From: Trichoplax adhaerens
Taxonomy: Eukaryota > Animalia > Placozoa
Reading direction: 5' to 3'
DNA length: 64,000 nucleotides
NCBI RefSeq assembly: GCF_000150275.1
Contig: NW_002060949.1
Span: 3,788,449 to 3,852,448, forward strand
Positions 11,633 through 55,958 of this stretch are shown here, one piece after another (position 1 is the stretch's first letter; each line of letters starts with the position of its first letter). The translations under genes were made by a program, and so were the position numbers. Under the pieces are notes generated by a model. That model was not told the DNA's origin. It did no database searches and saw only the letters and a list, made by a program, of their open reading frames with translations.

Positions 11633-11639
11633 ATGATTA

Positions 11640-16000: not shown

Positions 16001-16184
16001 NNNNNNNNNNNNNNNNNNNNNNNNNNNNNNNNNNNNNNNNNNNNNNNNNNCCTACGTTGAGAATCATTAATATAACTAATGAATGAGCAGCAGAATTGCG
16101 TTAGCGCTGATCTATTAGATAACCTGGAAAATACTGCAGTTATTAACTCTACTAATAATATTATCTTCGCCGTAGCTGACGTAC

Positions 16185-22316: not shown

Positions 22317-25149
22317 ATGCCTATCCTGGTCAATAACGCAGAATTTTATCAACGATACCGCCAGCAAATTGATGGCATTCGAAATTGTAACATTGCCAAG
22401 CTTCTCTTCAGTTTTTGCTGTTTTGCCAATTGTATCGCCATAGCAGTCTTAATTCGTTATCACAATCAAGCCTTTATCGTCATCCCTTTCATCGGTAGTA
22501 TTATTGTAAGTTGCAATGCTAGCGTAAGGAAATTGAAATGAACTGGATCATCAAATATCATTTTCTTCTCCCCTATTTGCCAAAGTAATACTTCTCCTAT
22601 CATCTAGTGACGATAAAAGATTCACCAGTACTGTAGCTAGCATGGATGGCACTTTTCTTTCAGGCAGTTGACATCATTTAGGCTCAAAATGGCTTCTTCT
22701 TTATTACCGTAGATTGTTTAGTACACTATGCATTTCTTAGAAAGTTCGTTCAATTAATCCTATGGTCATAAAGTATAACTGTTATCAAAGTTGACTTGTA
22801 TCCTCCATTGAACTCAACCTTACATGGTTCTCAAGCTCTTGATACAGTTATAAAAGAACTGATTAGGATCGATAATTATTCTTAGCTCTAGAAATTGTTA
22901 GCTTGCAGTTAGTTAGCCAAACTCGAGTTGTAAATATTCAAACCAATAGACAATAGTTTATCATGAGACGCCTAATTTTACCTTACCATTGTAGTTTTTA
23001 ACATATACAAAGCCATTTTACGCCAGTATTCGTTATACGACACAATTGCCTTAGGTCATTTCTTGAATATACTTTGTTATTCCAACACTTAATTACTGTA
23101 ATACCAAGGTCTATATCTTGAATCAAAAATATGATCTATTTCAGTTGGTAAAGTAGATTACATTCTGTTCGACATCGATGGGAAGTTTCTATCAATTTTT
23201 ATATTAGGCTACCGATCGTTCGACGATACTTTTCTTCATTAATTTTAATTTTATAACCCTTTAAGATTTTTATTTCTCTGTGCGTGTCGATGTGCTGTGG
23301 TAATAATACGTGTATACTATACTTTATGGTGGCATGAATTAATAATTTCTACCGTAAGAGATGAATGTTTGCAGCTCAAATGAAAGTCATAATCATTTGT
23401 AAATGAGAAATCTATAAATTCAAATTGGTATCAGGAACTACTTTTACATAGTCCTAGACAAAACATCTAATTTAAAGGAGTCTAGCGATTGAAACGTTTA
23501 AATATCTATCAACCTTAAGATAATGTCAAATGAACGATATTCAATACGGAGTAATGTTATCTATTTCATTCTCGTCGTCTAATCATTCTAGGCTTTTGGT
23601 TCATCAATTTTGAACATTGTCACATTTAGCTCAGAACAGCGAATTGCTACATTCACCAAAAATGTAAGTATTTTCGAACAATATTATTTACCAGTTTCAA
23701 TTTTACCTTCTATGTAACTATCCGTGCCATCAAATAAAACGATACCGAGTTTATTTTTGCTATATTAATGGATATTTTCTCCTTACCCATTTTTCACTCG
23801 AAAAGAATAATAATAATAATATTGCTTAGCATATACGCGTATATTATTTCTCGCTTTCAATTTCCTTGACAGAAAGCATTATAAATTTTTTAATGATGAT
23901 GAGACGGTATTGATAGTTTTTGAAGATGAGAAGCAATGTGCTTCTCTTCAAAATGGATGACTTTATTGTTAGTTTTGATATTTAGTATGCAATTAGATTG
24001 ATTTCACAATAGCTATGGTGCGATACCAACCTTACATGCCCTTAATTTAGTCCACGCTTGTTGATTAATTTCCTCTTTTTTTTGCAATCTTGTGGTTATA
24101 CGAGTATTTCCATTAACTTAGGCATAAAATGCTAATTCTACTGTAGATACAAAATTTCTCCCTAGTTAGCGTAGTCAGATCTCAATGTAGACGCATATTA
24201 CTTTATCGAGTACAGTAAAGTGCACTAAAGAAGCTTTTCCTTGGTCAGCATTGAATCCCTGTATGAATTGATTCGTAACAACCGTATAAATTCGTTAATA
24301 GACAGTAAAATAGGAAGAACATAAATTTTCAAATGTTGCTCTTTCACCTTGGTAACTGGCTTAGCGATTTTTACTCATATTGGAGATATCGTAGGCGCAT
24401 TCTCGCAATTCTACTTGGACTTTAAGATCTACTCCCAACCACTTGACTCAATTTCTTAGACAGTTTCAGTTATTAGGGTTGATTATTAATTAATACTATA
24501 TTTAAATGTTTTCGTTAGCATTACTGATAGCCATTGGGACCCATATTCAGTCAAGAAAGACTGCTGATCCTACTGCCAACGCCCAGTTCTATGTAGCAAC
24601 TTACAGTACAATGCTATAGTTTCTTACTGAGAACACTCATACATTTATCCTATCTTTTATGCCTTTAAACAATTTGATGGTTTAAAATCTTAATTTTTGA
24701 GTAATAACGACATATCTTTACTTTTATGACGTGTTCATTAGCCTGTAGGATACAGATATGGCGTGTCTTTTTCTGATATACCTATTGCAGTTGCCTTTGG
24801 CATGTATATCTATCTTTCAATTGTGACAAGTTCATCCTATGCTGCGATCAGAGCTCCAATTATTAGTTTCACTGTTTTGGCCTTATTGGTACTCCTAATG
24901 TCAACTGCTTATGAAATCACTATGAAAAGAATAGTCGCTTTTGCGATCGTGAGTTTTATTTTAATTAGACTATATCGCGGAAATTAGCAGCTGTAAAAAT
25001 TAAATTCCATATTTTGTTCTAAATTTACATAGGTGCATTCGTCTATACCTACAACTGTAGTACCAGGCGCTACTGTAGCTGTCACCCAGACTGCTTATCC
25101 TCCGAACTACCCACCCAATCAGTACCAATCAGTATACCAATCAGTATAG
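22317..25149 (+). CDS. G4: tetraspan protein (194 aa as assembled); tail frameshifted, ancestral stop probably at 25318
   Basis: Exons 22317-22505 (MPILVNNAEFYQRYRQQIDGIRN...IVIPFIGSII), 23592-23663 (72 nt, AFGSSILNIVTFSSEQRIATFTKN), 24742-24948 (207 nt, PVGYRYGVSFSDIPIAVAFGMY...IVAFAI), 25033-25149 (VHSSIPTT...AYPPNYPPNQYQSVYQSV*). All GT-AG, phase 0. Confidence 0.85.
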
Positions 25150-30761: not shown

Positions 30762-33700
30762 ATGGCTGATCAAGACGTTTCACTGAATGAGCAATTCCGC
30801 AAACGTATTGCTGGCTATATGAAAGTCATTCTCATTTTTATCGATTGGAGCTCTGGTCGTTGCAATTATGATGACAGTAAACTTTCCCTCCATAGCAGCA
30901 TACTATCACGTGTTTCCGTTGGCCGGTGCTTCAGTGGTAAGTGTTCGCCATCGTTACCATGCGTATTACGGTAGTTGACCGTGACGATAATGGCGTCATA
31001 GTGATGGTGCAATAGTACAGTACAATAACGGATCCACCAACAGCTACCTACCTTGAACTTACTGCAAGTGATCAAACTCATTGGCAAAACTACAGTGCAG
31101 CAGGAATATGGCTTGCATTCTTTTTGTGAATTTCATTTCACATAAAATGGAATTTTGCCTTTTTCCTTGCATTTTTTTAGAAGCATTACGAGTACGCGTG
31201 TATATGTCATATATACTCAGCACAATTGGTGCCAATGACTGGACATGATTCACTTTGAGATGTTATGTTTTCAATTACTTGGCGTGGCTGTATAGAGTGT
31301 TAGGATCATATCGGATATAGCACAGTACTGTACTTTAGATATGAGTATAGGATTTGATTTGAGCCAACTGACTGTAAAGTGAGTAATTTAGACTTGAATT
31401 TGAAATAAATATGGATAATNNNNNNNNNNNNNNNNNNNNNNNNNNNNNNNNNNNNNNNNNNNNNNNNNNATATGCCTGGCAGAAGGTAATTGACAATTTT
31501 TAACAGAATGAATTGATTCATTGTGTTGAATTGTTACAGTGTACTGTACACTGTACAGTGCAACCAGCCTGTACCCTGTACTGTACAAACAGCTACCTAC
31601 CTTGAACTTACTGCAAGTGATCAAACTCATTGGCAAAACTACAGTGCAGCAGGAATATGGCTTGCATTCTTTTTGTGAATTTCATTTCACATAAAATGGA
31701 ATTTTGCCTTTTTCCTTGCATTTTTTTAGAAGCATTACGAGTACGCGTGTATATGTCATATATACTCAGCACAATTGGTGCCAATGACTGGACATGATTC
31801 ACTTTGAGATGTTATGTTTTCAATTACTTGGCGTGGCTGTATAGAGTGTTAGGATCATATCGGATATAGCACAGTACTGTACTTTAGATATGAGTATAGG
31901 ATTTGATTTGAGCCAACTGACTGTAAAGTGAGTAATTTAGACTTGAATTTGAAATAAATATGGATAATATACAATAGATATGTTCATATATACTGTAGAT
32001 ATATCTATATCTAGATATTAATTTACAGATTAGCATGCTTGCAATGATTTCGCAAAGGACTCTTTCCTCGGCTTATATAACGGGACTCTTTGCAGTCCTT
32101 GTGAAATGCGATGTTTATTGGTCTGTGTGTGCTTCAAATTCCATGGTGCGGATACAGTGCTGGTCTAAATTCTGTCATAGGACGGCTCTCTTTGATGTTG
32201 GACCTTTAATAATTAAGCTAATAAAGTACTTAACCTTAGTTAAATCGTCTTTGTTAGTTTTTTCTAAAAGTCTCTACAATAATTTACTCAACCGAGCGGT
32301 GCAAACCCGATTTGGACTAAATCGGCTATGCGCCGCTCGGTTTTTCACTGATCTTCACCATGAAATACAGTACTACATCGGTAGGACTGTTTCAGCGAAG
32401 TGTACAATGAATTTAGCGCAAAACAAATGGGGCTAATGCTAATCTACTCATATCTCTCTCTATACTGGACACTGAGTGTGCAGTACAGTACTGTATGTAT
32501 GTTTTATTACTATATTTTGCGTTTCAGATTCGATCGCTAACAAATGTTGGAACAGTCTACTGTACTCTACAGTGTACAGGATATTGCAAGTTTAAAATAT
32601 ACCTGAGTTTACACTACTAAGCGGACATGGTTAATTAATTTAGGATATTCATATAGATACTTTACCGTTTCCATGTCTTTCTTTTTAGTAATCTTTGATG
32701 TGTATTCCATTGTAACATGATTCTGCTAGTAGTAAATGAAGCAACAGACCAAATTACATACAAAACACTGGTACATTAGTATGGACGTGGCAGTCTGTTT
32801 TGCTGACTCCGAATATTTCAAGCAAATTGCCCCTACCTACAGTGTAGTACAATTGTTGCATATACATTGCAATCAGAATAGATGTCAGCTGATACGCAAC
32901 TATTAGCTCATCAAGCAAAGGAAGCACGAATGACATTTTAGTAAGAAAGCAATTTCTATACTCTGGTACAGTATTTCATGGCATATTTATTTAATTATCA
33001 TTTTTTACGGGTTAATCGTCATGACTACATACAATACTGTACATGCACTAGTTCCGTAGATAACAACAGTCATAGCTTCCTTGATGCCAGTAAATCTATA
33101 ATGCTTACGGGGTTTTGTCTAAATATGAAACGGGATTTACCCGACTACTGTTATCTTACTGTGAACTATTGTACTGTACAATGTACAGTAGATCCAGCCA
33201 TTTTGAAATTTAGTCTTTCGTACACCTCGCTGAAACTACGCTGCCGATGCATTATGTCCACTGACAGTATGTGTATTCCCTCTTAAATTGCAATCTTTTA
33301 AAATTTTTTCTCGCAGAGTTGTTATTATCTATTTGGTATCAATAGCTAGTCTTGACGTAACGTGCAGTCATTGCAATTCTCGGATTTTCATCAACTTTTT
33401 TCGTCAATTGTTAATTTTTAGACAATCTTCGCTTCAGCCGCTGTTGTATATGTGTTCATTTCGGAAGAAAGAAAAGAGCATTTCATCAGTAATGTAAGAA
33501 TGTCAATATAATGTAAACTAGCTATCACAACGTTTACATCTAACCGTAAATTGATGTATCTTGCAAATCTGATAGGTAAACCTATACCTCGTAGGAACAA
33601 CTGCAGGCGAGATACCGATGGCTATCGCATTTGCTGTAAATTTGCATTATATTTCTACTTCTTATTTGGACAATACACTGGCTGTAGTGTACGCTGGCAT

Positions 33701-33974
33701 TTATGCCCCTATATCATCTTGTATAGTTGGAACTTCGATATGGATGCAAAGAGTTAAAGCTGTCAAATGGGTAAGTCGTTTTTGATGCGATTGTAAATCA
33801 AAACGGTCTACAAAACTTGAATCGAATTGTGAACATTTTTTGTACATATTTAATAATATAATCATAATCCCTCCGTAGCTCATGCTGACTAGTTCGGTCA
33901 GGAATACTGCTTCTGCAACTGCCGATCGATTCCCGCCAGGATATGGGTTTAGTACTTCTTCGCCTTCTGTCTAA
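30762..33974 (+). pseudogene. G5: pseudogenised paralogue of G7
   Basis: Exon1 30762-30936 is 175 nt versus 195 in G7 (20-nt deletion after ...ILIF, frameshift). Exon2 33422-33493 (TIFASAAVVYVFISEERKEHFISN), exon3 33576-33770 (VNLYLVGTTAGEIPMAIAF...VKAVKW) and exon4 33879-33974 (LMLTSS...FPPGYGFSTSSPSV*) remain open. The copy right of the 31420 gap lacks exon 1 altogether. Confidence 0.82.
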
Positions 33975-38154: not shown

Positions 38155-40418
38155 ATGCCCTCTCCTGTCGTTATAAATGCAACCGATTTTTACACTCGAT
38201 ATCGGTTGCAGTTAGATAGCATTCGCAATTTTAGCATACTTAAGTTGCTCTTTTCAATCGGCTGTCTAATATGTTGTATTCTGTTGGCTACTTTCTTCAC
38301 ATTTTACTTTGACAACGCTTTTATTATAGTTCCTTTTATTGGTTGTAGCATAGTAAGTAATTATGATAACTAAAATTATTTTATTTTAATGACATCGAAC
38401 GATTCTCTTATTAAATAATTACTACGGTTCGATGTCGATATTCAAAAAGAGCCAATTACAGCCACAAGCTTTTAAAATGAATCTGTAGGCTACGGATTTT
38501 GCATTATAAACTTACACGTACTGTATGATATTACTACAAGCGTATTCTCGATTGTGCTAGAACTGTTTCGGTGACATAGCTCTTAAATCTTTGATTTATT
38601 TATGTTAACCAGACCTTGCAAATTAACTTTAATAGTATCGTATTAGATAGTGATTCGTTAAATAAAATGTTGGTGCCTTAACAATGACATACAACGCAAA
38701 TAAGTACTTGAATGTATCGAATTGTACTAGACGTGTGAGTGTATCCATTTCTCTTAACGTAATTTCGGTACAATCTATAGTCATTATGATTTTATAAGTC
38801 TTCATGCAGCCAATTTAGTCGATTAAGATCTGTTTAACACATTTGTAATTACTAAAGTTACATTATAGGGTGTGTATATACTATGATATGATCATTATTG
38901 ACTATAAACTAATGACAGAAAAACGCTAAATTTTTATGTTTTAGACTATTCTTTCTTCCATCATGAACGCTTATATTTTCTCAGCAAAAACCCGTCTTGG
39001 TACTTTCTTGAGTAACGTAAGTAACTAATAATTTGTAGCATACGTTCTTAATATCTTCAAGCTATCATATGTATATTTTACTGTTTTAAACAAGGCAATA
39101 ATTATCATTAATTAATTTATCACTATAAAGTATCATTATGTTTACTGTAACATGGTTTTATCGGAGATAAAGTTAACCCTTCCCAATTTACTCATACATA
39201 TTTCGTAAGCAATCGACTATAGGAATCCTACATTAGCTCCTATACCTGAAGATTAATACGAATACAGTTGATCATTTCATTATTTTGACCACATCAATTT
39301 TGCTTAAAATAAGGATTTTATTTTATCCATTACAACTTGTTTTTAACCAACATTATAGATAACGATTTGTTACGTATCTTAATTTACATCATCTGATTAT
39401 CTTGTAATAGATTCTTTAAGTAGAGACGATTCACTCACTAACTCTAGCCTATTAAATTAATCGATTTTGTACAAGTTTGATAATGTCTGTGTTGGCAAAA
39501 ATTCGGCTTTAATTTTTAATAATTACGTTATGATATAAAATAAATTTGATTGCAGTACAGAAACTACTTAAATTTACGATAAGTATATTTTTGATCGGTT
39601 GAAATATGATCACTACTCTTACATTTAATTATTTCTCTTCATCTATAATAATCCTATATTAGATAGTACCGCAGCATTTTTTTCTTAGAGAATCACAATC
39701 ATTTAAATCTTTTAAATTAAATTTTATGTTTTTACTTGGTCATAAGCCGGCAGGATACCGATATTTCATTGCTGCACTTGATCTTCCTCTTGCAGTGGCT
39801 TTTGGCATGTATGTTTACTTATGTATTAATGCGCCAAGTGACAACAGGATAAAGCCAACAATTGTCAGTTTTACAGTTCTCGCCTTCTTAGCACTGTTAT
39901 CGGCAGGCTATTTCGAGACAACTATGAGAAGTGTATACATCTCGGCATATGTAAGTATGGCAGTGTTTCCTTTATAAAAACGGTACATGGTGATATATTA
40001 GAAAGTATTGAATGCATTGCTAGGTATAATATACGCATTTTTCAAATACTCGTATATGACCAAGAATTATCATTTTATGGAGAATGACTTTCTGTGACAT
40101 AATATTTTAAAGCAAAGTTATCCTGGATAATCATGATTCACTATTAAGTGAGGTATTTTTATTGTCCTTGAATTATAGCTAAGAGCAGTTCAGATACGGA
40201 ATCGCAGAAATCAGCGTCGTTCTCGAAATACTAATACGCCTACCAATACCAATGCAAATGTTGAAAGTAGTTATGTTGACAATTATAGTAATCCTCCGGT
40301 CGCTAACCCGAGTGCAATGCCGTCTCGATCTGCAGTTGACGAGCCACCAACAGCCCCTATGGATCCGCCGCCATATGATGATGATGATGATGATGATGTG
40401 AAGCCATTAGTTCCATAA
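38155..40418 (+). CDS. G6: intact 237-aa tetraspan protein, paralogue of G4, tail with PTAP, PPPY and acidic run
   Basis: Exons 38155-38352, 38945-39016 (72 nt, TILSSIMNAYIFSAKTRLGTFLSN), 39747-39950 (204 nt, PAGYRYFIAALDLPLAVAFGMY...ISAY), 40179-40418 (LRAVQIRNRR...DEPPTAPMDPPPYDDDDDDDVKPLVP*). All GT-AG, phase 0. Confidence 0.9.
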
Positions 40419-41275
40419 ATGCGCTAATAAAATGTAGAGAGATATAGATTAATACAACTTCATAGCTGCTATTGGTATTTATATATGCAATAATAAATTA
40501 ATAGTGTCTGACTGTAATTTCTAAATTGACTATTAAAATTCACTGATAACTTAAAGAATTATCTAGTAAAATAGTATGTTAAAAATTAAAGCGAATATTT
40601 AGTGTCTAGTTGATTTTAATTGCTTAATAACCACTAAAGACGTGATAGCCGGTAATGGATAGAGATTATATCAGCTGTTATGCTCAGTGTAGGATACGAT
40701 ACTGATGGTAGTTTAGATGTAGTTGTAGATATTTTGTTTCTAGCGATATACGTAATACAGTATTTCAATGTTAAATAACTATATATTGCAAGCGCTGTTC
40801 ATATTTAATATGGTACTAGTTGAGATGTTAGTATAATAAGTATAATTAAGTCTAATGTAGCTCGGTAGCGATAAGCAAGTCATTATTTACGGTTAATTAT
40901 TTAAGGACCGCGTGTAAGGGAGTACATTTGTTTAGGTGTTCTTCTTCTCTGTAAGAGCTACCAGCCGTGAGATATAACTGTAAATAAAAACCCATTTCAT
41001 GGTAACAGAAAGGAGATTAAAATATTTGAGAAAGATACAGCTATGGTTATTCTACTATATAAGACCCAGCTCGAGTATTGGTATTTAATAAATACAATAA
41101 CAATAAATAACGTATGTTAAGTACGCGTAATATAAATTCGCTCACTTATTTTTGTAAGTTAAGGAAAGTCGAATATAGGAAAGGTACTGTGCTACATTTT
41201 ACTGTAATTAAGCTTGCCGTATTGTACTGTGTCACTATCCTCAAACCACGAACAGTAACTCGTAATTAATTAATA

Positions 41276-42644: not shown

Positions 42645-42991
42645 TAAGTTACCTTTTCTGTAAGCTATTCTCATGGAAATTATGAATGACTATGTGAACA
42701 TCGTTGTTATAATTTACTCATACGATTGTAGATTGATTCCTTCACAAATCTGATTAATGAATTAGATTCTTTTTTGAGTTTCAAGCCTTTTTCTTTCGTA
42801 TTACAGTAGAATTTATTTATTTATTTATTACTCACTTCTAAGCGTAGGTATGAGAAGTACTGATATTAACGAACAGTAAATTTAACATGAACTAACAAGT
42901 TTACCTACTGAGTATAATTTTACTGTAAAGAAACTTTTGAATATTTTTATTTCAGTGTACTGTAAGTGGAGAGGTGATCAATATCGAACCC

Positions 42992-43308: not shown

Positions 43309-45607
43309 GACCCTATAGTATTTCGCTTTCATTATAAAACACTAATAATACGCAATGATCACAATTTTCAACAAAAGTTGCTTAGATAACTTGGATAGCA
43401 AATCTTACATCTTGTAAAATTACTTTATGACACCAGACATACAGAATTGAGTCGGGTGAATGAATCTATTGCTAAATACACTGGATGATATGCAGTGCTA
43501 TGATTTATTTACAAGTTCTTCGATGGTATTTAAGTCAAGCGCTTTATACGTATGGTTTTAAGCCTAAAATTAACAAGCTTTCATGAATGTTTGGAATAGC
43601 ATTACAGTTCGTAACGATTTGTTTTAATATCCAATTCATAGTGTAGTGACTCTATTAACAATCATCAATGTTTTAAATATTGTTAGAGTACCTTATAAGT
43701 TCTACGAAATGGTCACATCAGATATTTATGTACTTGTGTCTAAAAATGCCTATTGGAGTAACTAAGTTCGTAGCTGAGTCTGATTAATCCGCTGTAGATA
43801 TTGGCGTAGCGGCCAGTGGATTACCACAAGAATATGCATTTAATACTGCTTCACCCTCAATTTAGCGAAATTACGTATTCTATTCATTGTTATTCATCCA
43901 GGTTTTGGATCAATCATAATGTACTTAATGGATTAATTGATACAGGTATCTAGATCATAACGGTTTTAAACCGAACCGAACCTTTCTCAGGTCTAGATAC
44001 AGCTAGGGCACATAGCTGTCATAATATTTAGTTCAAAGAATCTTTTATTACACTTACTGCAATAGAACAGTAAATAGTTCTAAAAATGGAGTTAATTTAT
44101 ATATTTTGGCTTAGTCACGATCTGCTATCTTTAATATCATCTTTAATTGAATATTTAAGTAGAAACAATCAGTGATAATTTGTTATGTATATAATTATAC
44201 AGTATTGCATATCATAGCATGCAGCGGATTCATGATTATGGCTAAAGCAGAAAGCTATATATAGAGGCTTCATCTCTTTGATACTGCACATGTATACTTC
44301 AATAAGTCGCAATGGCGAATTACATACAATATAGAATTTGGAGAGCAACAGTTCCAGGCTGGACGAGTGTTTGATCCATTTAGCAAAGCCTTACGCACAA
44401 TGTTTTCATTATCCAATTGCAATTATCGAGTTAAAGAGATACTAGAGTGTTTATCTAAAAACGTTAGAGCTCTGTATGAAATTATGCATACCATATATTG
44501 CCTTACTAGTGTGATTTGCCGAGCAAATAAGTAACATTTGAAGTACAAGATAAGTTCTTGCAGTTGCATTGATAGCCCTATTCAATGTTAATTGAATAAA
44601 ATTACTTTATTACTGATCCTAAGCTATACGGTATATAAAAAATCGCTCAAGACTCATATCCATCGATCAACTTGTATTGATTTCCTTGTATAAATTGTTC
44701 TTATGGGGTCATTCACAACTATGCCAATTTCGTCATAACTAGGCTGACTAGTGGCCGCTGTCATACTAGTGCATGCAGTTATACAACTTATACGCCTTGA
44801 TCGCTTTGTCATCAGTTCAGACCTGGCTCGGCAATAACGTTGGAATCGTGATATTGACTGTACTGTGCTTTTACAGGTTCATCTGTCAGTTGTATTGAAA
44901 GTCTTTAATTTTCGGTTTGAGTGATTATGATAATACTCATTTATTGTGAGCCGGCTTGGATATCACTAGCAATAGTGTTTGCATCAAGTCGATTGCTGTA
45001 GGTTCTTATGATCGACTTGATCCTAGTGTTTTTACGTAGCAGCAACAGCAATTATAATACCGCCAGCTCTAGAGCATCTTAGAAGTTGCTGGTCTTACCT
45101 TGCCTAGACTGCTGTACAGTACAGTACAGTACAGTTAGATTTAGCATCTTTCTAAAGTTAATACTGTAAACAAAAATTGAGAGAGTGATCGCCAAGTTCA
45201 TTAACGAACCTGAGAAACGTTCAGATGCGGAAATTTCAGCCTTCTTAGACTTTAACTTTAAGACATGGTGACTAAAAGTTAGTTGGTTAATGAAAATGGA
45301 GGAATGTATGGGCAGGGATTACTTAATAACTTTCGAGCAGCCCCTGTTTTAAAGGGGGGAGGGACCTAAGTAGGCACCGCGTAGATCATGGGGATCTCCG
45401 AATGCGTCATTAACTAACTCTTCGATGTCCACGTGACCATCAAACAAGGCATACAGTACAGTACAGTACAGTACAGTACTGTACCGAGTATAAACGCTTA
45501 AAATACTGTAGGAAAAGCATCCACTTCCCGCATCCAGTGCGCAACTTGGAAGACATTGAACGAAAGATATTTCTTCTCTGTATTTTCTCATACGCGATTG
45601 AACAAAA

Positions 45608-47198
45608 ATGGCAGATCAAAGCGCTTCACTGAATCAGCTATTCCGCCAACGTATTGCTGGCTATATGAAAGCCATTCTTATCTTTAATAGTTGTAAATTA
45701 GCTGCATCTATTGGAGCTCTGGTCTCTGCAGTTTTTATCAGACTAAACCTCCCCGGGATTCTAGCATACTATTACGTGTTGCCTTTGGTCGGTGCTTCGG
45801 TGGTAAGTGTTAGCCGTCGTTAGGATGCGTATTGTGGTAGTTGACCGTTAGTACATTACTACAATAGCCTAATATTGGTAGTGCCATAGTACTGTACAAT
45901 AATAACAGATCTACGAACTGCATTCAACTTCAGTTACGAAACTCTTTGGCAAAAGTACAGCACAGTGTATTTCACGTGAAATGGAATTGTCCCTTTGTCC
46001 TTGGGTTCTATTACAGTAGAGTACATCATTCACATTTATATGTTACGTTATTAATTACTTACTTTAATGTGGCTTTATGAAACGTATCAAACAATCAATA
46101 GGAATGATCGCAAAGGGCTCTTTGCTCGGGTTGCACACAGTATGATACAACACTACATCGGGGACTCTTTGCAATCCTTGTGAAATAAATATTTTATTGG
46201 TCTGTGCGTGCTTGAAATTCCTTTAATACGGACACAATGCTGGTCTAAATTCCGTGATAGAACGGTTCCCTTTGATGTTTGACTTTTATTAATGAGTCCT
46301 GTCGCTGTCTTTCTTTTTAGTAGTTTTTGATATGGATTCAACTGTAACATGATTCTGCTAGTAGTAAATGAAGTAACAGACCAAATTCCATACAAAATAC
46401 TGGTACATTATTAGGATGTGGCAGCCTACTTTGCTGCCTCCAAATATTTCAAGCAAATTGCCGCTACCAGGGACTACTCGACTAAAAATTCTCCCCTCAA
46501 AGCCGTAACTAAAAATATTTCCCCTATTCCAAAAATACATTACAGTACAGTTGTTGTATATGTCATATATATACTGTACATTACCATCAGAATAGATGTG
46601 AGCTCATCAAGCAGAGGAAGCACAAATGACATTTTAGTAACAAAGCAGTTTCTGCACTCTTGGACAGTACAGTACAGCATTTCATGGCATATTTATTTAA
46701 TTATAATATAATGATTTACTGTTAATTACCCAAGTTGTCATTACAATACTGTATATGTACTGTACTAGTTCCGTAGATAACAACAAATCTCACAGCTTCC
46801 TTTATGCGGTAATTACATCTATAACGACGTTTTGTCTACATAATAAAGGGGATTTACCCAACTGCTGTTATCGTACAGTTAGCAATTGTACTGTACACTG
46901 TACAGTCGATCTTACCATTTTGAAATTCAGTCTTTCGTACACCTCGCTGAAACTGCTCTGCCGATGCATTATATCCACTTACTGTACAGTATAGCCCTCT
47001 TCATTAAATGGCAATATTTTAAAAAATTTTTCTCGCAGAGTTGTTACTATCTATTTATCTGTAAGCTATACCATTGGCTGTACGTACTTGACAATATCTA
47101 GTATTGATGCAACGTGCAGTTATTACAATTCTCTAATATTCATCAACTTTTTTCGTCGATTGGTAATTTTTAGACATTCATCGCTTCAGCCGCTGTGT
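45608..47198 (+). CDS. G7': copy of G7 (exon 1 and start of exon 2), truncated by assembly gap
   Basis: Exon1 45608-45802 (195 nt, MADQSASLNQ...FIRLNLPGILAYYYVLPLVGASV, GTAAGT). Exon2 starts 47174 and runs into Ns at 47199. Confidence 0.78.
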
Positions 47199-47442
47199 NN
47201 NNNNNNNNNNNNNNNNNNNNNNNNNNNNNNNNNNNNNNNNNNNNNNNNGCGTCATTAACTAACTCTTCGATGTCCACGTGACCATCAAACAAGGCATACA
47301 GTACAGTACTGTACTGTACCGAGTATAAACGCTTAAAATACTGTAGGAAAAGCATCCACTTCCCGCATCCAGTGCGCAACTTGGAAGACATTGAACGAAA
47401 GATATTTCTTCTCTGTATTTTCTCATACGCGATTGAACAAAA

Positions 47443-49395
47443 ATGGCAGATCAAAGCGCTTCACTGAATCAGCTATTCCGCCAACGTATTGCTGGCTATA
47501 TGAAAGCCATTCTTATCTTTAATAGTTGTAAATTAGCTGCATCTATTGGAGCTCTGGTCTCTGCAGTTTTTATCAGACAAAACTTCCCCATTCTTCCAGC
47601 ATTCTATTACGTATTGCCTTTGGTCGGTGCTTCGGTGGTAAGTGTTGACAATAGCGTAATATTGGTAGTGCCATAGTACTGTACAATAACAGATCTACTA
47701 ACTAAATTCAACTTAAGTCACGAAACTCTTTGGCAAAAGTACAGCACAGTACGAGTATGCACACGGCTTGCTTTTTTTCTGAATTCCACTTCACGTGAAA
47801 TGGAATTGTCCCTTTGTCCTTGGGTTCTATTAACAGTAGAGTACATCATTCGCATTTATATGTTACGTTATTAATTACTTACTTTATTGTGGCTTTATGA
47901 AACGTATCAAACTATCAATAGGAATGATCGCAAAGGGCTCTTTGCTCGGCTTTCACACAGTATGGTACAACACTACATCGGGAACTCTTTGCAATCCTTG
48001 TGAAATATTTTATATTGGTCTGTGCGTGCTTGAAATTCCTTTAATACGGACACAATGCTGGTCTAAATTCCGTGATAGAACGGTTCCCTTTGATGTTTGA
48101 CTTTTATTAATGAGTTTAAGCACTCTCTGAATAAACCCAAAATGGACATTGTTAATTATTTTTTTATAATATTCATATAGACACTAAACCGTTTCCTGTC
48201 CCTGTCTTTCTTTTTAGTAGTTTTTGATATGGATTCAACAGTAACATGATTCTGCTAGTAGTAAATGAAGTAACAGACCAAATTCCATACAAAATACTGG
48301 TCCATCATTAGGATGTGGCAGCCTACTTTGCTGCCTCCAAATATTTCAAGCAAATTGCCACTACTAGGGACTACTCGACTAAAAATTCTCCCCTCAAAGC
48401 CGTAACTAAAAACATTTCCCCTATTCCAAAAATACATTTTACAGTACAGTTGTTGTACTGTACTGTATATGTCATATATTTACAGTACATTACCATCAGA
48501 ATAGATGTGAGCTCATCAAGCAGAGGAATGTTATCGTACAGTTAACAATTGTACTGTACTGTACTGTACACCAGTCGATCTTACCATTTTGAAATTCAGT
48601 CTTTCGTACACCTCGCTGAAACTGCCCTGCCGATGCATTATAGCCACTTACTGTATAGCCCTCTTCATTAAATGGCAATATTTTAAAAAATTTTTCTCGC
48701 AGAGTTGTTACTATCTATTTATCTGTAAGCTATACCATTGGCTGTACGTACTTGACAATATCTAGTATTGATGCAACGTGCAGTTATTACAATTCTCTAA
48801 TATTCATCAACTTTTTTCGTCGATTGGTAATTTTTAGACATTCATCGCTTCAGCCGCTGTTGTTTATATGTTCATTTCGGACGAAAGAAAAGAGCATTTC
48901 ATAAGTAATGTAAGTATGTCAATATATTATGAACTAGCTATTACAACGTTTACATCTAACCGTAAATTGATGTATTTTGCAAATCTGATAGGTAATCCTA
49001 TACCGCATAGGAATTATTGTATGCCAGATACCGTTGGCTGTCGGATTTGGTTTAAACATCTATTTAGTTTCTATTTCTTCTTATGCCTATATACCGTCTA
49101 TTGTGTACCTTGTCTTTTCTGGCCTCATCATATTCTTCCTTGGAATTGGAAGTTCGGTATGCATGCGAAGAGTTTACGCTATCAAATGGGTAAGTCGTTT
49201 TTGATGCGATTGTAGATCAAAACTGTCTTACAGAATTTTAATGGAATTGCGACCATTTTTATGCACATATTTAATATTGTAATCATAATCCCTCCATAGC
49301 TCATGCTGATTAACTCGGCCAGGAATACTGTTCCTGCATCTGCCAATCAATACCCGCCAGGATATGGGTTTAGTACTCCTTCGCCTTCGGTTTAA
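47443..49395 (+). CDS. G7: intact 186-aa tetraspan protein with PPGY tail
   Basis: Exons 47443-47637, 48838-48909 (72 nt, TFIASAAVVYMFISDERKEHFISN), 48992-49189 (198 nt, VILYRIGIIVCQIPLAVGFG...VYAIKW), 49300-49395 (LMLINSARNTVPASANQYPPGYGFSTPSPSV*). All GT-AG, phase 0. Confidence 0.9.
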
Positions 49396-50640
49396 CGTAA
49401 TTTATCTTTTGTATCTACTCATTCATTGCTTGTTGATGCTAAGTTTTAAATCATTTTTATGCTGACAAATTAATCATCAGTGTATAAATGTCCAAAGTTT
49501 ACTAATATGATTTGTTAACGTAGAAAGGACATTTTTTAACTGTCATCACATATAATTTGAAGAACCATATATAGTACTATATTTTTTAGCCGTAGCACGT
49601 TGAAACACCGTAGAAAGATCTTCAATCTTATGGATTTTGCCTAGCGATGTAAAGGCATTTAATAGTTTTTTACCGTATTCATTTTACTCGTAGTTAATAT
49701 AATACGATCCGTCGATTAGTTACTGCATGCTAAAGAAAAGCCATATGCGTATATCGACTCTTTACTTTTGGTCTTGATATTATTCTCCTATATTACAATA
49801 AAAATCGAAATGTTCAATATTCATAACAGTGTCAACAGCAGCGTTATAAAATATAAAATATATTGCATTATGTGCAATATATTGATACATTGTATTACTT
49901 CCGGACTTGGGAGCATTGAGTCTACTAGTCCTCGCAATTGACATAGGAAGCAGTCGAACCCTTGCTCGTGATACTTGGTATCTACTGTATATACTTGTAT
50001 TGTATTTTTTACTTTACAGTACATATTACTGTCACTACTGCACCATGACAGATTAGTTGTGTAGCCTTAAAGATGAAGTTGCAATCATAATTGTACAAGT
50101 CTTAGTTTGAAGTAATTTAATAGGCATCTATTATTAATTCATTAATTAATCTACAGTATACTTACTGTATATACAGTACAGTACATCAAGTAGAAGCCGA
50201 TTTTTTTGGTAATACCATCACGGCCAAACGGAGTAGGCGTATACTAGAAATATCATGTTCCAGCGCTTGACGTTGCTCAAATTTGTTGTAATTCAATATA
50301 CAATATACTATATTACATGTAAAAATTTCTATGTGAAGTTAGTAGACATTGCACGTTACTTTACAATTTGGGCGATAATGCTTGGCTACGCGGGTTATGT
50401 TTACAGTATTGTCACGGTACGCCGTTACCAAATGAGTAAGTAACTGTTAATGAATGTATAATCAAATAAGGCTATACAGTATGTCGTATGTGATAGCTTG
50501 TAGCTACCTAAGGATGAGAATATCTACTGCATGTACTGTACTGTACATATTTAGTAATGTATGATAGTGATAACGGTAACTTAAATTCTCACTGCTTAAC
50601 ACTGGAATTCATTGTAGAAATCTATTTAAGCGCGTGTGTA

Positions 50641-52000
50641 CTAGTGCAAACTCCCGTCGCTTTACTGACGGTTTACGATAATGTGCTCATTTAACAGAGG
50701 TTCAGTAACTATCAGATCGCTGACTAACGAACATTATCCTCTTAGAAATACTTTTTGTAATATGATATATAGCAATCAAAAATAACCGGGACAGGGGAAC
50801 TATAGTAGGGTAACACTACGAATTGCAAGAGAGCAATAGAACTAAGAGTACCTACTGATGTGTATCAATCACTTTTCAAATTTCGTTAAGTAACTTTCGT
50901 ATTAGTATGTTTACCGAATAAGGATGGTTACTATATACAGTATAGAAATCAAAAGTAATTGGGACAGGGGAACTACAGTAGGATAACACTACGAATTGCA
51001 AGAGAGCAATAGAACTAATAGTACCTACTGATGTGTATCAATCACTTCTACCTTCTCAATAATATTTACATAAATCCTACAGATCATTCATTTCTATACC
51101 AATTCAAATTTCGTTAAGTAACTATCATATTAGTAATCGGGACAGGGGAACTACAGTAGGATAACACTACGAATTGTAAGAGAGCAATAGAACTAATAGT
51201 ACCTACTGATGTGTATCAATCACTTCTACCTTCTCAATAATATTCACATAAACCCTACAGATCATTCATTTCTATACCAATTCAAATTTCGTTAAGTAAC
51301 TTTCGTATTAGTATGTTTACTGAATAAGGATGGTTACTATATACGGTATTAATGCTATGTTAAGGTTGGTGAGCGAAACTTTCAAATATACGTTTATGGT
51401 CAATTTCTTAATAAAATTAACAGATAGTATTATCATTCGATATTATATATATCCTAGTAACAGTAATTAAGATTAGTTAATGGTCCAGAGCACATTATGA
51501 TAACTAATGTACGGTGATGGACATACCAAGTTAAGATTAGCAGGTACTGTAAGATATCTACAGTGCGGTAGAATGTCCTTCGTACTGTACTGTGGTCAAT
51601 TCTATACCAATCATTATAATGTGTCTAAGGATCGCTGTCGTATGCAAGCAAAGCTTGCTCTGTCGATAACAACCGTTATAAGAAAATGTAACAATCAAAA
51701 TGGCTGTATAGAAAACTCTATAAAGATTCTATGTTTATTCAATTTTCATCAGAATATTACATGAAATCAAAATTTAAAGGCCCAGTGGCCACCCTTAGCG
51801 ATATAACGAATACTATTTTAATAATCAGTACTCTGCAGAAATTACTACCTTAGAGCTATTCGTTTTACATGAAGAAATCTTTAGGTTAAAAGTACTGTAA
51901 GAATCTTATACTGACCTATTGAAATGAACCCATAATCAGAGTCATTTAACAGTAGTATAAATACCCCCGCGCTGCTCATTTCAAGGGAGGGTGGCTGGGA
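50641..52000 (-). mobile_element. Non-autonomous Helitron, copy 2 (1360 bp)
   Basis: Near-identical to 41276-42644 with the same A|TC and hairpin-CTAG|T ends, but unrelated flanking DNA. Confidence 0.82.
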
Positions 52001-52437
52001 TCAGTAGTTGGTCAAAAATGATGCAAGACTCGTATCGTAAAGAATAATGTAATATATTCAGTTATTTGTGGAGTTCAGCCGAGAAATCGAGTTGTCGTAT
52101 ATCACTAACATAGAAACTGGAGATACTGGGAGAAGTAAGCCGAGTCATTATCGTTGCACGAGAGATTGTTTACTTCGTTCAAGTACGTTTCCTTTGTCAC
52201 CAAGAGAGGGTTGCGACAAGTACAGTACTGTACTGTATATCTGTTACGGGCAATGTATGAAATTATTTAATACAAATGCCATACAGCTATTTTTATGCTA
52301 AATAATCCAATAGACGTTTTGTGGAGAAATGCCCGGTTGACCGTGGCTGGTTATTAGTTAGTGATTGATAAAAGCGTCGGAGGTCGTAAATGTTACGACA
52401 GGTGTTTTTACGTCCACTACCGTATTATGAAGTGTCG

Positions 52438-52710: not shown

Positions 52711-53410
52711 AATAACAACTCCAACGCCTTGTAGAACTGTAGTGCAGCTTGTGTAAGCATACTTTGAGCTCTGAGGTTAAAACTGAAAAATAACTCCAAC
52801 ACCTTGTAGAACTGTAGTGTAACTTGTGTAAGCATACTTTGAGCTCTGTGGTTAAAACTTCAGAATAACTCCCAACACTTTGTAGAACTGTACCGTAACT
52901 TGTGTAAGCATACAGTTTGAGCTCTGAGGTTAAAACTGAAAAATAACTCCAACACCTTGTATGTAGAACTATAGTGTAACTTGTGTAAGCATACTTTGAG
53001 CGCTGTGGTTAAAACTTCAGAATAACTCCCAACACCTTGTAGAACCGTACCGTAACTTGTGTAAGCATACTTTGAGCGCTGTGGTTCAAACTTAAGAACA
53101 ACTCCCAACACTTTGTAGAACTGTATCGTAACTTGTGTAAGCATACTTTGAGCTCTGTGGTTAAAACTTCAGAATAACTTCCAACACCTTGTAGAACTGT
53201 ACCGTAACTTGTATAAGCATACTTTGAGCTCTGTGGTTCAAACTTCAGAATAACTCCTAACACCTTGTAGAACTGTACCGTAACTTGTATAAGCATACTT
53301 TGAGCTCTGTAGTTAAAACTTCAAACTTCAGAATAACTCCTAATACCTTGTAGAACTGTACCGTAACTTGTGAAAGCATACTTTGAGCTCTGTGGTTCAA
53401 ACTTCAAACT
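52711..53410. repeat. Minisatellite, 9 units of ~76 bp
   Basis: GCATAC anchor (mostly GCATACTTTGAG) at 52757, 52832, 52908, 52989, 53065, 53141, 53217, 53293, 53376. Confidence 0.95.
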
Positions 53411-54085
53411 CATACAAAACAAGTAAAACGCAATAGCCCGCAAGACACCCAAATACTTGGGCTACATTGCGCTCGACTGGTACGGTTCTGCAGTACAGTA
53501 CTGTATTTTTACTGTTCTTGAGTGCCTCTTGCACTGTCCTATACCCTTTTCTTTCATACTTTACTGTACACTATACAGTACAACGGACACCATACTCATT
53601 CTTAGTAGGCTTATATAAAGTATTGTACGAATATTTATTTATAATACAGTACTGTCTATCAAGTGGAAGGGTGTCACCAAGTGCCACCGTGAAGGTTAGA
53701 ATTAATTCTACTGTAATTGAAAAAATTTCAATCCAATCGGTGTCCACTTTCGAAAGAGATCATCAAGACTACAGTAACAAGTGGCCTGTGCGACTTGCTT
53801 GAAAATTACAAGAAAAACCAACTCTTGGTCATATTTGAAATCGAATTTTATACAATAATTGCCAATTATGTTTGGATTGACGTGATGGAAACATTTAGCC
53901 TGTGCTTAATTGTATTTCATGTATGGCTAATTTCAGATGTTGACGATAGGCAATTATAGAATTAATCGTAACAGTCAAACACTTTTGAAACATCGACATA
54001 CATCCAAATAACTATAATCCATATTACTACTACGGAGCACTGATTGTCAACCGCTATATACAGTCTTAATCTGCAAAATTACAGC

Positions 54086-55958
54086 ATGTCGACGAATAAT
54101 GCTCTGAATCGGAGGCAAGAAGAACTTATCCGCCTTGACCTGCGAAGGATTCACGTCGTCTGTTGGGTCACTGTTGTATGTAACATTGGATCTTTAGCTT
54201 GTTGTTTAATCTACAATATGAACGCTCAATATCCTCGCAACATAGGTATAATTTATGTGGCCATAACTTGTGTAAGTATTGCTTAAAAACCAACGATTAA
54301 TGATTGATAGCTAAATTTATCGGAAGTAAAGAAAGTCGCTTATTACGTACGATAAGTACACGTGTAGAACGAAGTTAAAGTGTGATAAGAAAAAGTGATT
54401 AAAATAGAGATGTCAGTATAGATACGCGTATACGAGGCAATAGACTACTATTTACCTACTGCACTACCGATAGAAAACTAATGGATTCTTCAGTTTCACT
54501 GGATTTGATCTAAAATTTCTTCCTTTAATTTAAAACGAATGATTAAAAATTTACTATATTTGTTAGTGCTTTAGTAGAGTATTCGACTTGTACCGTAGAG
54601 CGAAAGAAGTAAAACTGCTGATAAAGAAAGTACATATAGTCGTATACTGTACGTTGGTGATAGTAGGTGTTAGGCATTGAAGAAAAAATTTGATTAGTGT
54701 GCAATCCCTGATAGGTGTTGTCTGTTATTTTGTTATGTAAACGCTCTCGCTACTCGCTATAATGAGAAAGGGAGTTAGTTTCGATGACATTTTATGAATT
54801 GAAATCTTTGACGGGTACTGTAATTCGTACAGTATGATGAAAATTGAGTAGTCAATGAATGACAGTAATCAACTTTTCACCATGTTCGATAGTCAAGGTT
54901 TCACGAACCACCACATACTTTCAATCGGATCATTACACTTATAGACTTTAATGTAATCATTTAATTAGCTTTACAGCAGTTGTATACTTTAGCGAAGTTA
55001 AAGTTCTTTAGCCTTAACTGATGAGCAAATCAATAGTTGTAAGGCCTTGATGACAATACTTGCTGTACTGTATACAATTTATATACGTATAGGAAAGAAT
55101 TGACTGAGTCATAATGTTATGTTTTTCCATCTTTTTTATAGATATTTCTTCACACAGCAATGCTGATCGTTCTTTGCAACAAAGATGCCGGACCTTTAAT
55201 CATTTCTGCGAATGTAAATGACATCAATTGCTTTAGATATTATTATTTTTATCAAGCATTTTTCTCAGATCCTGTCATTTGCGAATGTACTGTATAATCG
55301 TTTGTTTGTGAGTACTTTTTGATAGCTCATATTTTCATTTTTGACATGCTAGATGAGACGAATATCCGGAATTTCGGGCATTAGTAATATTATGCCTGCT
55401 GTTGCTGTGGTAGCATGTGCAATTAACGTTTCTGGTAGTCGCGGGCCGATAACTACTGCTATGAGTGCCTGTATGATGGCGTTATTTGTTATGATTTTTA
55501 TTACTCAAAATTACTGTGTCAGTATCTTGAAGAAGAGTATTCCAGGCTTTCTGGTTAGTATAAACATGCCAATTGTCAAGATTTAAATACTAGATTCCTC
55601 ACAGTTATTATTATTGTTCTTGCTTGACTGCATTCTACTACTTTAGACTTTAAGAAGATTACGTGTACATGCTGGAGAACGCAGAAGCCGAAATAGGGCG
55701 ACAAACACAAATACTGTTCCTGAAGTTCCAGCTGTATTACCGAGTTATAACCAAGCTACCGGAGCACAGGATGTAACGGAATCTCAAGATCAAGCTACTG
55801 ATCTACCTTGCTACGAAGATGTTTATAACAATAATGACAGCACGAATGTGTCTCAGCCTATTCCACCCAGTTATGACGAGGTTATCGTTAACAATACTCC
55901 TATATCTGACGGTTCTACTAACGGAAATAATTCCACAGCGCGATCCAAAGTAAAATAA
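54086..55958 (+). CDS. G8: intact 256-aa tetraspan protein with three PY motifs (LPSY, LPCY, PPSY)
   Basis: Exons 54086-54271, 55142-55213 (72 nt, IFLHTAMLIVLCNKDAGPLIISAN), 55353-55553 (201 nt), 55647-55958 (TLRRLRV...VLPSYNQ...DLPCYEDV...IPPSYDEV...SKVK*). All GT-AG, phase 0. Confidence 0.9.

What the first reader, a model, noticed from the sequence alone, without database searches (positions are those of the whole stretch)
48992..49189. Exon 3 has diverged far more than the adjacent intron between G5 and G7: visible diversifying selection on TM3-loop2-TM4
Hand alignment of the first 39 codons of exon 3 (33576.. vs 48992..) gives 12 identical codons, 26 amino-acid-changing and only 1 purely synonymous. 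There are 32 differences in 117 nt, 26 at codon positions 1-2 and 6 at position 3. The adjacent 82-nt intron 2 differs at only 6 sites and exon 2 at 6 of 72. Neutral decay of pseudogene G5 cannot make an exon diverge about 3.5-fold more than its intron or favour positions 1-2. Hydrophobic character is kept while residues change, as expected for a ligand-, pathogen- or allo-recognition surface (inference).
Basis: partly seen in the sequence, partly recalled or inferred. Interest (0 to 1): 0.85.

Follow-up and report, generated by a model that had tools for sequence, protein, structure and literature searches.

The report
Fast-evolving exon in placozoan membrane gene
Two neighbouring copies of a small four-helix membrane-protein gene of the placozoan Trichoplax have swapped 46 of 65 amino acids in one exon while the silent sites and introns around it barely changed, a clear mark of natural selection for change; what the protein does is unknown.

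Summary
In the first 39 codons of exon 3 there are 32 differences, 26 of them at codon positions 1-2; intron 2 differs at 6 of 82 sites and exon 2 at 6 of 72.

Over the whole exon, 46 of 65 aligned codons change the amino acid and only one is purely synonymous.
- dS is 0.125, the same as the non-coding flanks (13.2%).
- dN is 0.458, giving omega 3.7 (NG86) or 5-6 (ML; LRT p = 2-3e-4).
- dN against non-coding divergence gives p = 4e-9.
- No closer donor exon exists in the genome.

Corrections to the reading:
- The excess is about 2.2-fold over the wider non-coding background, not 3.5-fold.
- G5 is not an old pseudogene. Its Trichoplax sp. H2 orthologue is intact and has the same exon 3; H1 only lacks 20 nt in exon 1.
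- Most changes lie inside TM3 and TM4 and halve G5's hydropathy. Family-conserved positions changed mainly in G5.
- "G6" is the other haplotype of G7, not a paralogue.
- G7 exon 3 is polymorphic: 8 of 198 nt differ between H1 and H2, against 2 of 1,949 beside it.

A recognition role remains untested. The scan had noted this gene cluster before.

The parts
48992..49189 (+). G7 (TRIADDRAFT_64090) exon 3, 66 codons: TM3, loop 2, TM4. This is the finding.
   Evidence: Splice joints 48909>48992 and 49188>49299 in RNA run X19, whose exon 3 has 0 differences from the window. Translation. Matches P0007 residues 90-155.
33576..33770 (+). G5 (TRIADDRAFT_58216 / TrispH2_000681) exon 3, 65 codons; the paralogous partner in the comparison.
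   Evidence: Identical in H1 and H2. Present in P0004 and P0005.
48910..48991 (+). G7 intron 2 (82 nt), 6 differences from G5 intron 2 (33494-33575).
48838..48909 (+). G7 exon 2 (24 codons; end of TM2 and the intracellular loop); omega 0.49 against G5 exon 2 (33422-33493).
47443..47637 (+). G7-type exon 1 (65 codons: N-terminus, TM1, loop 1, start of TM2).
   Evidence: Joint 47636>48837 in RNA.
49300..49395 (+). G7 exon 4 (C-terminal tail with an invariant PPGY motif, plus the stop codon).
49052..49144 (+). Cluster of 8 differences between the window (allele a) and the H2 contig L008 (allele b). It gives 6 amino-acid changes at exon-3 codons 21, 28, 29, 30, 32 and 39.
   Evidence: 49079 T and C each at about half depth in two DNA runs of organism A.
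45089..47198 (+). 'G6': the second haplotype of the G7 locus (5' flank, exon 1 at 45608-45802, intron 1, first 24 nt of exon 2). The assembly laid it in tandem before the N gap 47199-47248.
   Evidence: The H2 haplotig L010 carries the G6-type 5' part contiguous with exon 2 and intron 2 up to 48971. L008 and L010 share the same upstream flank. The two types each lie at about half depth at 47950-48012. P0007 joins G6-type exon 1 to exons 2-4.
30762..30936 (+). G5 exon 1 in H1, 175 nt. It lacks 20 nt after 30835 that H2 has (L009:10339-10358), which shifts the frame within TM1.
33879..33974 (+). G5 exon 4 (C-tail, PPGY, stop).
24751..24939 (+). Exon-3-like piece of a more distant paralogue (Ga), used as an outgroup.
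39756..39938 (+). Exon-3-like piece of a more distant paralogue (Gb), used as an outgroup. Its exon-2-like piece is at 38945-39016.

Best explanation
G5 and G7 are two functional tandem paralogues of a placozoan-restricted gene. It encodes a protein of about 186 residues with four helices. The 3' two-thirds of the two genes last shared a common sequence about 0.13 substitutions per neutral site ago.

Since then exon 3, which encodes TM3, the short loop 2 and TM4, has fixed amino-acid replacements about 3 to 4 times faster than neutral sites changed. The cause is positive selection for amino-acid change, not decay and not a foreign exon. At positions conserved across the family the changes fall mainly on the G5 lineage, whose two helices became much less hydrophobic (inference: new function, or a new helix-packing or partner interface). 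The G7 lineage also keeps changing in and around loop 2, where its alleles differ.

Shown: the rates, their significance, the equality of dS with the flanks, the absence of a donor, the intactness of G5 in H2, and the transcription and splicing of G7.

Inferred: the polarity of the changes, the membrane topology, and any functional meaning.
For: Codon table: 46 of 65 codons replaced and 1 purely synonymous; differences by codon position 20/25/11.

NG86 for exon 3: Sd 5.5 over S 47.7, Nd 50.5 over N 147.3, dS 0.125, dN 0.458. Exons 1, 2 and 4 together give omega 0.79.

GY94 pairwise ML: omega 5.2-5.9, LRT 12.9-13.7, p = 2-3e-4. The first 29 codons, which need no gap, give omega 6.2, p = 0.019.

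dN of exon 3 against non-coding divergence gives p = 4e-9, and against dN of the other exons p = 2e-5. dS of exon 3 against non-coding gives p = 1.0.

Only two DNA copies exist in the genome, and no protein-level exon-3 match is better than 38% identical.

G5 is intact in H2 with an identical exon 3.

G7 is spliced as modelled in RNA, and the source record of its H1 model names it 'expressed protein'.

G7 in H1 against H2: 8 of 198 differences in exon 3, against 2 of 1,949 in the rest of 47249-49395 (binomial p = 2e-7). The three other paralogues have no H1/H2 difference in or near their exon-3-like pieces.
Against: Only two paralogues and two or three alleles are available, so no site or branch-site model could be fitted.

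The result for the second half of the exon depends on the alignment. A protein-guided alignment with two indels gives omega 2.0, p = 0.08. That alignment is worse at the nucleotide level: 62 differences and two indels, against 56 differences and one indel.

The exon was picked by eye from many, so the p-value of the synonymous-versus-nonsynonymous test needs discounting for multiple looks.

Polarity rests on outgroups that are only 35-39% identical, and only on conserved positions.

The allelic cluster in G7 has N:S of 6:2, which alone is not above neutral. Both assemblies are unphased consensus sequences (PMC6057997).
Confidence: 0.72

Rival explanations
1. Recognition-surface diversification. 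The two short outer loops and the helix ends beside them bind a variable ligand, microbe or conspecific molecule, and balancing or diversifying selection keeps many forms, between paralogues and between alleles.
For: Replacement density peaks at two places: codons 31-55 (end of TM1, loop 1, start of TM2) and exon 3. The 12 allelic amino-acid differences of G7 fall only in codons 46-54 and 110-128 (permutation P < 5e-6). At least three exon-3 versions of G7 are seen across the assemblies and runs. The positive-inside rule puts both loops outside (inference).
Against: Loop 2 has about 9 residues, and most replacements lie inside TM3 and TM4. The exon-1 allelic cluster is the first 59 nt of a 1.1-kb haplotype block that is 6-14% diverged throughout, so it needs no selection. 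Allelic N:S is 13.5:3.5, close to neutral. G5 exon 3 shows no variation between H1 and H2. Changes at conserved positions are one-sided. No function is known. No placozoan allorecognition gene turned up in the papers listed by the search.
Confidence: 0.25
2. Mosaic history. The flanks, and even exon 2 and the introns, were homogenised by gene conversion between G5 and G7, while the core of exon 3 escaped and keeps an older divergence; or exon 3 was imported from another paralogue.
For: The pair does have a mosaic history. The exon-1 region is much more diverged (67-72% identity, dS 0.29) than the 3' part (about 87%, dS 0.12-0.15). One 54-nt identical run in the 3' flank is longer than expected (P = 0.002).
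Against: An older or imported exon must be diverged at silent sites too. Silent divergence in exon 3 is 0.125, equal to the flanks. Only 1 of 47 differing codons is purely synonymous. No donor exists in the assembly. No unusually long identical tract abuts exon 3.
Confidence: 0.06
3. Relaxed constraint or pseudogene decay in G5, with or without mutational bias.
For: The H1 assembly has a frameshifting 20-nt deletion in G5 exon 1. G5 lost family-conserved residues.
Against: Decay cannot exceed the neutral rate, yet dN is 3 to 4 times the non-coding and silent divergence. G5 is intact in H2 and its exon 3 is identical there, so the deletion is very recent or an assembly error. Positions 1-2 are hit far more than position 3 or the introns, which no strand-wide mutational bias explains.
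Confidence: 0.03
4. Assembly or annotation artefact: collapsed haplotypes, a chimeric consensus or a wrong reading frame creates the apparent divergence.
For: The locus is badly assembled. G6 is a haplotig laid in tandem, N gaps are present, and the window's G7 may itself be a mix of two haplotypes. Both assemblies are unphased (PMC6057997).
Against: G5 exon 3 is identical in two independent assemblies. G7 exon 3 of the window is reproduced exactly by an RNA contig from another laboratory's run. The frame is fixed by the spliced joints and by three independent protein models. Swapping G7 allele a for allele b changes only 8 of the sites compared.
Confidence: 0.03

Closest known systems
CD20/MS4A-like tetraspans (Pfam PF04103), including mammalian MS4A genes in tandem clusters
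   Same: A small protein of about 186 residues with four predicted helices, short outer loops and charged N- and C-terminal ends. The genes lie in a tandem cluster of diverged paralogues with a shared exon plan. The best named look-alike in the ESM Atlas is a CD20 cluster, but at a score (0.81-0.84) that chance also gives. Earlier notes of this scan call neighbouring genes CD20-like.
   Different: No PF04103 match for P0001 or P0004 even at E = 10. None at this locus in a six-frame genome scan. No match to any solved structure by profile. The AlphaFold model is too poor for a fold comparison (pLDDT 51). Membership is therefore not shown.
Exon-limited adaptive divergence with conserved flanking introns, as at the peptide-binding exons of MHC genes (my own knowledge, not tested here)
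   Same: One exon carries a large excess of replacements, while the neighbouring introns and exons stay similar between copies and alleles.
   Different: Here most replacements lie in membrane helices, only two paralogues and two or three alleles are known, and no binding function is known.
Asymmetric acceleration of one copy after gene duplication (neofunctionalisation, or escape from paralogue interference; general knowledge)
   Same: One copy (G5) departs from family-conserved residues, while the other (G7) keeps them.
   Different: The acceleration is confined to one exon and is extreme: 71% of its codons are replaced at dS 0.125. The other copy also varies between alleles.
MARVEL-domain four-helix proteins (PF01284)
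   Same: Four-helix membrane protein of similar size; weak Atlas look-alike (0.77-0.83).
   Different: No Pfam match.

Membership tests
CD20/MS4A-like (PF04103) | Match to the family profile at or above the curated cut-off (27.9 bits) | tested here: not met
   hmmscan of P0001 and P0004 at E up to 10 gave no CD20 row. The exon-wise scans gave none either. A six-frame genome scan with PF04103 found nothing at this locus.
CD20/MS4A-like (PF04103) | Four transmembrane helices with both ends in the cytoplasm | tested here: met
   Four long helices in the model (3-47, 52-77, 80-117, 125-164) and four hydropathy peaks. The orientation is inferred from the positive-inside rule only.
CD20/MS4A-like (PF04103) | Fold similarity to a solved CD20 structure | tested here: inconclusive
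   The AlphaFold2 model has mean pLDDT 51 and pTM 0.29, so no fold search was run. A profile search of PDB sequences gave no match at E up to 10.
Genes under positive selection | dN/dS significantly above 1 | tested here: met
   Omega 3.7 (NG86). Omega 5.2-5.9 with LRT p = 2-3e-4. In the ungapped first 29 codons p = 0.019. With the poorer protein-guided alignment p = 0.08.
Genes under positive selection | Replacement rate above an independent neutral yardstick (introns and flanks) | tested here: met
   Nd/N is 50.5/147.3, against 152/1,151 in non-coding DNA (Fisher p = 4e-9).
Genes under positive selection | Silent divergence of the exon equal to that of the flanks (no older donor) | tested here: met
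   dS is 0.125 against non-coding 0.13-0.15 (p = 1.0). No donor in the genome.
Genes under positive selection | Recurrent change at the same sites in several lineages (site models) | tested here: inconclusive
   Only G5, G7a, G7b and a third allele seen in contigs are available. Codon 28 has three states, I, N and T. There are too few sequences for M7/M8.
Polymorphic self or non-self recognition loci | Many alleles in natural populations, with replacement polymorphism in an exposed part | not testable with these tools
   All data come from two sibling clonal lineages (PMC6057997). At least 3 exon-3 versions are seen.
Polymorphic self or non-self recognition loci | Genetic link to fusion or rejection, or to binding of a partner | not testable with these tools
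No gene of this kind in placozoans turned up in the papers listed by the search.
MARVEL (PF01284) | Match to the family profile | tested here: not met
   No row.

The most novel reading that the evidence does not exclude
This orphan tetraspan locus is a placozoan recognition gene, for self versus non-self, for a symbiont or for a pathogen. Its two outer loops and the helix ends beside them are kept diverse by selection: deeply diverged haplotypes are shared by H1 and H2, and a recently split paralogue (G5) has been driven to a new specificity.
Probability: 0.15. Interest if true: 0.8.

Novelty: new member of a known kind. Interest (0 to 1): 0.58.

Why it matters
Placozoans are among the simplest animals, and nothing is known of how they tell partners, microbes or conspecifics apart. 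A lineage-restricted, expressed surface-type protein with one exon evolving several times faster than neutral is a concrete candidate for such a role, or else a clean case of a duplicate acquiring a new function, and it can be tested.

The work also corrects the local annotation. One 'paralogue' (G6) is a haplotig. The 'pseudogene' (G5) is intact in the sister lineage. The G7 locus carries two very different haplotypes in both lineages, which bears on the hybrid-origin picture of H1 and H2.

Tried and rejected
- Pfam scans of single exons and of the full database proteins gave nothing meaningful.
- A profile search of PDB sequences gave nothing.
- A PF04103 scan of the genome found nothing at this locus.
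- The ESM Atlas gave only chance-level look-alikes, with CD20 and MARVEL as leads.
- AlphaFold2 on the two-sequence alignment gave pLDDT 51. I therefore ran no fold search and did not map sites on a 3-D model; I mapped them on predicted helices instead.
- A HMMER search of 1.84 billion representatives with exon 3, and two word-indexed searches with the full proteins, found only Trichoplax proteins. No orthologue from other placozoan genera was available, so no branch-site or M7/M8 test could be run.
- A search for a conversion donor of allele b in the H1 genome found only G7 itself.
- A simple longest-identical-run test found no tract next to exon 3.
- Hydropathy of the outgroup exons (1.2 and 0.7) did not settle which copy changed its hydropathy.
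- The supplements of Kamm et al. that are held do not list these genes. No paper names TRIADDRAFT_64090 or TRIADDRAFT_58216.
- The protein-guided alignment of exon 3 was rejected in favour of the single-gap alignment, because it needs more substitutions and more indels.

Full report
**What the locus is**

The window is G000:C1408:3788449-3852448 of a 105.6-Mb, 1,414-contig, 34% G+C eukaryote assembly. Database proteins identical to the window's exons are named Trichoplax adhaerens TRIADDRAFT_64090 (P0007, 'expressed protein', 186 aa) and TRIADDRAFT_58216 (P0005). Their nearest relatives are from Trichoplax sp. H2. I therefore take the window to be T. adhaerens (H1).

G7 has four exons: 47443-47637, 48838-48909, 48992-49189 and 49300-49395. 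All have canonical ag/gt borders. An RNA run (X19) has spliced contigs with exactly these three GT..AG joints, and its exon 3-4 contig has no difference from the window.

G5 has the same plan: 30762-30936, 33422-33493, 33576-33770 and 33879-33974.

The protein has four predicted helices, at residues 3-47, 52-77, 80-117 and 125-164 (low-confidence model), and four hydropathy peaks. By the positive-inside rule both ends and the exon-2 loop are cytoplasmic, and the two short loops (about 46-54 and 117-125) face outward (inference). Exon 3 encodes TM3, loop 2 and TM4.

**How the spliced model was handled**

I sent no self-joined spliced protein to any search tool. Exons were searched one by one, by reference. 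The full-length proteins I used (P0001, P0004, P0005, P0007) were all returned by the databases. The only place where exons were put in order was a sliding-window count inside a script.

**Check of the observation**

- First 39 codons: 32 differences in 117 nt, 12/14/6 by codon position.
- In those codons: 12 identical, 26 replaced, 1 purely synonymous.
- Intron 2: 6 of 82. Exon 2: 6 of 72.

Over the whole exon, with the one-codon gap that minimises nucleotide differences, 56 of 195 sites differ (28.7%). Of 65 aligned codons, 46 change the amino acid. Only codon 22 (AAC/AAT) is purely synonymous.

Pooled aligned non-coding DNA of the same duplicated segment differs at 152 of 1,151 sites (13.2%; Fisher p = 3e-7). 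Intron 2 happens to be the least diverged neighbour. The fair figure for the excess is therefore about 2.2-fold raw, or 2.6-fold with correction, rather than 3.5-fold.

**Is it selection?**

| Test on exon 3 | Result |
|---|---|
| NG86 synonymous | Sd 5.5 / S 47.7, dS 0.125 |
| NG86 nonsynonymous | Nd 50.5 / N 147.3, dN 0.458 |
| NG86 omega | 3.7 |
| dS against non-coding | p = 1.0 |
| dN against non-coding | p = 4e-9 |
| dN against dN of the other exons | p = 2e-5 |
| ML (GY94) omega, single-gap alignment | 5.2-5.9, LRT 12.9-13.7, p = 2-3e-4 |
| ML omega, first 29 codons (no gap) | 6.2, p = 0.019 |
| ML omega, protein-guided alignment (two indels) | 2.0, p = 0.08 |

The silent divergence equals that of exons 2 and 4 (0.149 and 0.131) and of the non-coding DNA. 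Exons 1, 2 and 4 give omega 0.74, 0.49 and 1.25.

The protein-guided alignment needs more substitutions and more indels. The codon table shows why it is wrong: third positions line up under the single-gap alignment.

- dN/dS not above 1. This fails to refute: omega is well above 1.
- An exon imported from an older paralogue with proportionally high dS. This also fails to refute: dS equals the flank divergence. In addition, the whole assembly holds only these two DNA copies, and no protein-level exon-3 match is better than 38% identical.

**G5 is not an old pseudogene**

The H2 orthologue (P0004, TrispH2_000681; locus L009) is intact through TM1, and its exon 3 is identical. H1 differs in the exon-1 region only by the absence of 20 nt (L009:10339-10358) after window position 30835. 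The remaining 3.4 kb holds 7 substitutions and one 2-nt indel.

The frameshift is therefore very recent, or an assembly error. I could not check it in reads. Either way, decay cannot explain a dN three to four times the neutral rate.

**Where the changes fall, and in which copy**

| Segment | Positions that differ (G5 vs G7) |
|---|---|
| N-terminus | 5 of 19 |
| TM1 | 9 of 26 |
| Loop 1 | 4 of 9 |
| TM2 | 6 of 24 |
| Intracellular loop | 3 of 16 |
| TM3 | 15 of 22 |
| Loop 2 | 8 of 9 |
| TM4 | 16 of 22 |
| C-terminal tail | 13 of 39 |

These counts are; the TM4 count includes the one-codon gap. Most of the signal is therefore inside the membrane helices.

Mean hydropathy of the exon is 1.48 in G7 and 0.78 in G5. 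At codon position 2, 13 of 25 differences have C in G5 (Ala, Thr, Ser or Pro codons). In non-coding DNA only 18% of differences are to C.

Two distant paralogues serve as outgroups (exon-3-like pieces at 24751-24939 and 39756-39938, 35-39% identical).
- G5 is derived at positions 5, 17, 20, 24, 25, 59 and 62, and more weakly at 8, 15 and 23.
- G7 is derived at position 18, and more weakly at 10.

This points to directional change, mainly in G5. The evidence is limited to conserved positions, and the outgroups' hydropathy does not settle the direction.

**Mosaic background**

The exon-1 region of the pair is much older (67-72% identity, dS 0.29) than the 3' two-thirds (dS 0.12-0.15). A past conversion probably reset the 3' part, and the burst in exon 3 came after it (inference).

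**The allelic dimension**

The H2 contig L008 carries the G7 orthologue or allele (P0001). Against the window:
- 1 difference in 1,743 nt upstream of exon 3;
- 8 differences in the 198 nt of exon 3, all within 49052-49144, giving six amino-acid changes;
- 1 difference in the next 206 nt (binomial p = 2e-7).

Using G5 as outgroup, five or six of these changes are derived in allele b and one in allele a. Codon 28 has three states.

In two DNA runs of organism A, position 49079 shows T and C, each at about half depth. A DNA run of organism B has a third version. The RNA of organism B carries the window's version. This fits Kamm et al. 2018 (PMC6057997). In that paper H1 and H2 are sibling-like clonal lineages that share alleles, the assemblies are unphased, and mean dS between them is 0.024.

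The three other paralogues show no H1/H2 difference in or near their exon-3-like pieces.

Taken alone, the allelic N:S of 6:2 is not above neutral. I treat this as supporting evidence, not proof.

**'G6' is a haplotig**

Several lines agree.
- The H2 assembly has a 2,256-bp contig (L010, P0006) with the G6-type 5' region running straight on into exon 2 and intron 2, up to 48971.
- L008 and L010 start in the same upstream flank.
- G6-type and G7-type contigs each lie at about half the local depth at 47950-48012.
- In the window, G6 ends at the N gap 47199-47248.
- The H1 gene model and the RNA contig both join G6-type exon 1 to exons 2-4.

G6 and G7 are therefore two haplotypes of one gene. Their nine exon-1 differences (six amino acids, codons 46-54) are the start of a 1.1-kb block that is 6-14% diverged throughout. 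That cluster needs no selection to explain it.

**What the protein is**

No Pfam family matches, including CD20 and MARVEL. No solved structure matches by profile. No relative outside Trichoplax was found. The CD20-like label that this scan gave to neighbouring genes remains a lead for G5 and G7, supported only by chance-level Atlas scores.

**Verdict**

The more specific claim of a diversifying recognition surface is possible but unproven. The 'pseudogene' premise was wrong.

The kind of event, positive selection on one part of a young duplicate, is well known. The gene and the strength of the signal are new.

Noticed in passing
window 45089-47248: 'G6' plus the 50-N gap is the alternative haplotype of the G7 locus laid in tandem by the assembler, not a truncated paralogue. 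The two haplotypes differ by 6-14%, with indels, across intron 1, and both occur in H1 and H2.
   Followed up: yes
window 30835/30836 (L009:10339-10358): H1 G5 exon 1 lacks 20 nt that H2 has, which shifts the frame within TM1. The H1 gene model TRIADDRAFT_58216 works around it with another splice. It was not checked in reads.
   Followed up: partly
window 31036-31419 and 31585-31968: A 384-nt stretch is repeated at 99.7% on both sides of the N gap 31420-31469, inside G5 intron 1. The H2 locus L009 has it once, so it is probably an assembly duplication.
   Followed up: partly
window 49354-49365 and 33933-33944: A PPGY (PPxY-type) motif in the C-terminal tail is invariant between G5 and G7, within an otherwise variable tail. 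It could be a docking site for WW-domain ubiquitin ligases (inference).
   Followed up: no
window 41274-42649 and 50639-52005: A 1.38-kb element repeated at 98.2%, with internal tandem units of about 173 nt, lies downstream of two of the tetraspan paralogues.
   Followed up: no
window 14484-20259, 52711-53410, 10919-11634: Long tandem arrays (units of roughly 317, 76 and 155 nt). The first is interrupted by two N gaps and flanked by 93-96% duplicated blocks (12312-14430 against 16052-17800), which may again be haplotype or assembly duplications.
   Followed up: no
window 47249-47357, 48448-48665, 50410-50500: Read-contig depth is 20 to 100 times the single-copy level, with many loose ends at 47319 and 48550-48571. 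This is a short GTAC-rich interspersed repeat.
   Followed up: no
window 33576-33770 against 48992-49189, codon position 2: 13 of 25 second-position differences have C in G5 (T>C nine times, G>C four times), so hydrophobic or Gly codons in G7 correspond to Ala, Thr, Ser or Pro codons in G5. Only 18% of non-coding differences go to C.
   Followed up: partly
window 22308-25305, 38155-40418, 54080-55950: Three more four-exon paralogues of the same family (H2 models of 249, 265 and 256 aa). They share the 24-codon exon 2 and the motif around 'P-[LI]-A-V-A-F-G' in TM3. Their H1/H2 differences (0.5-0.8%) avoid exon 3.
   Followed up: partly
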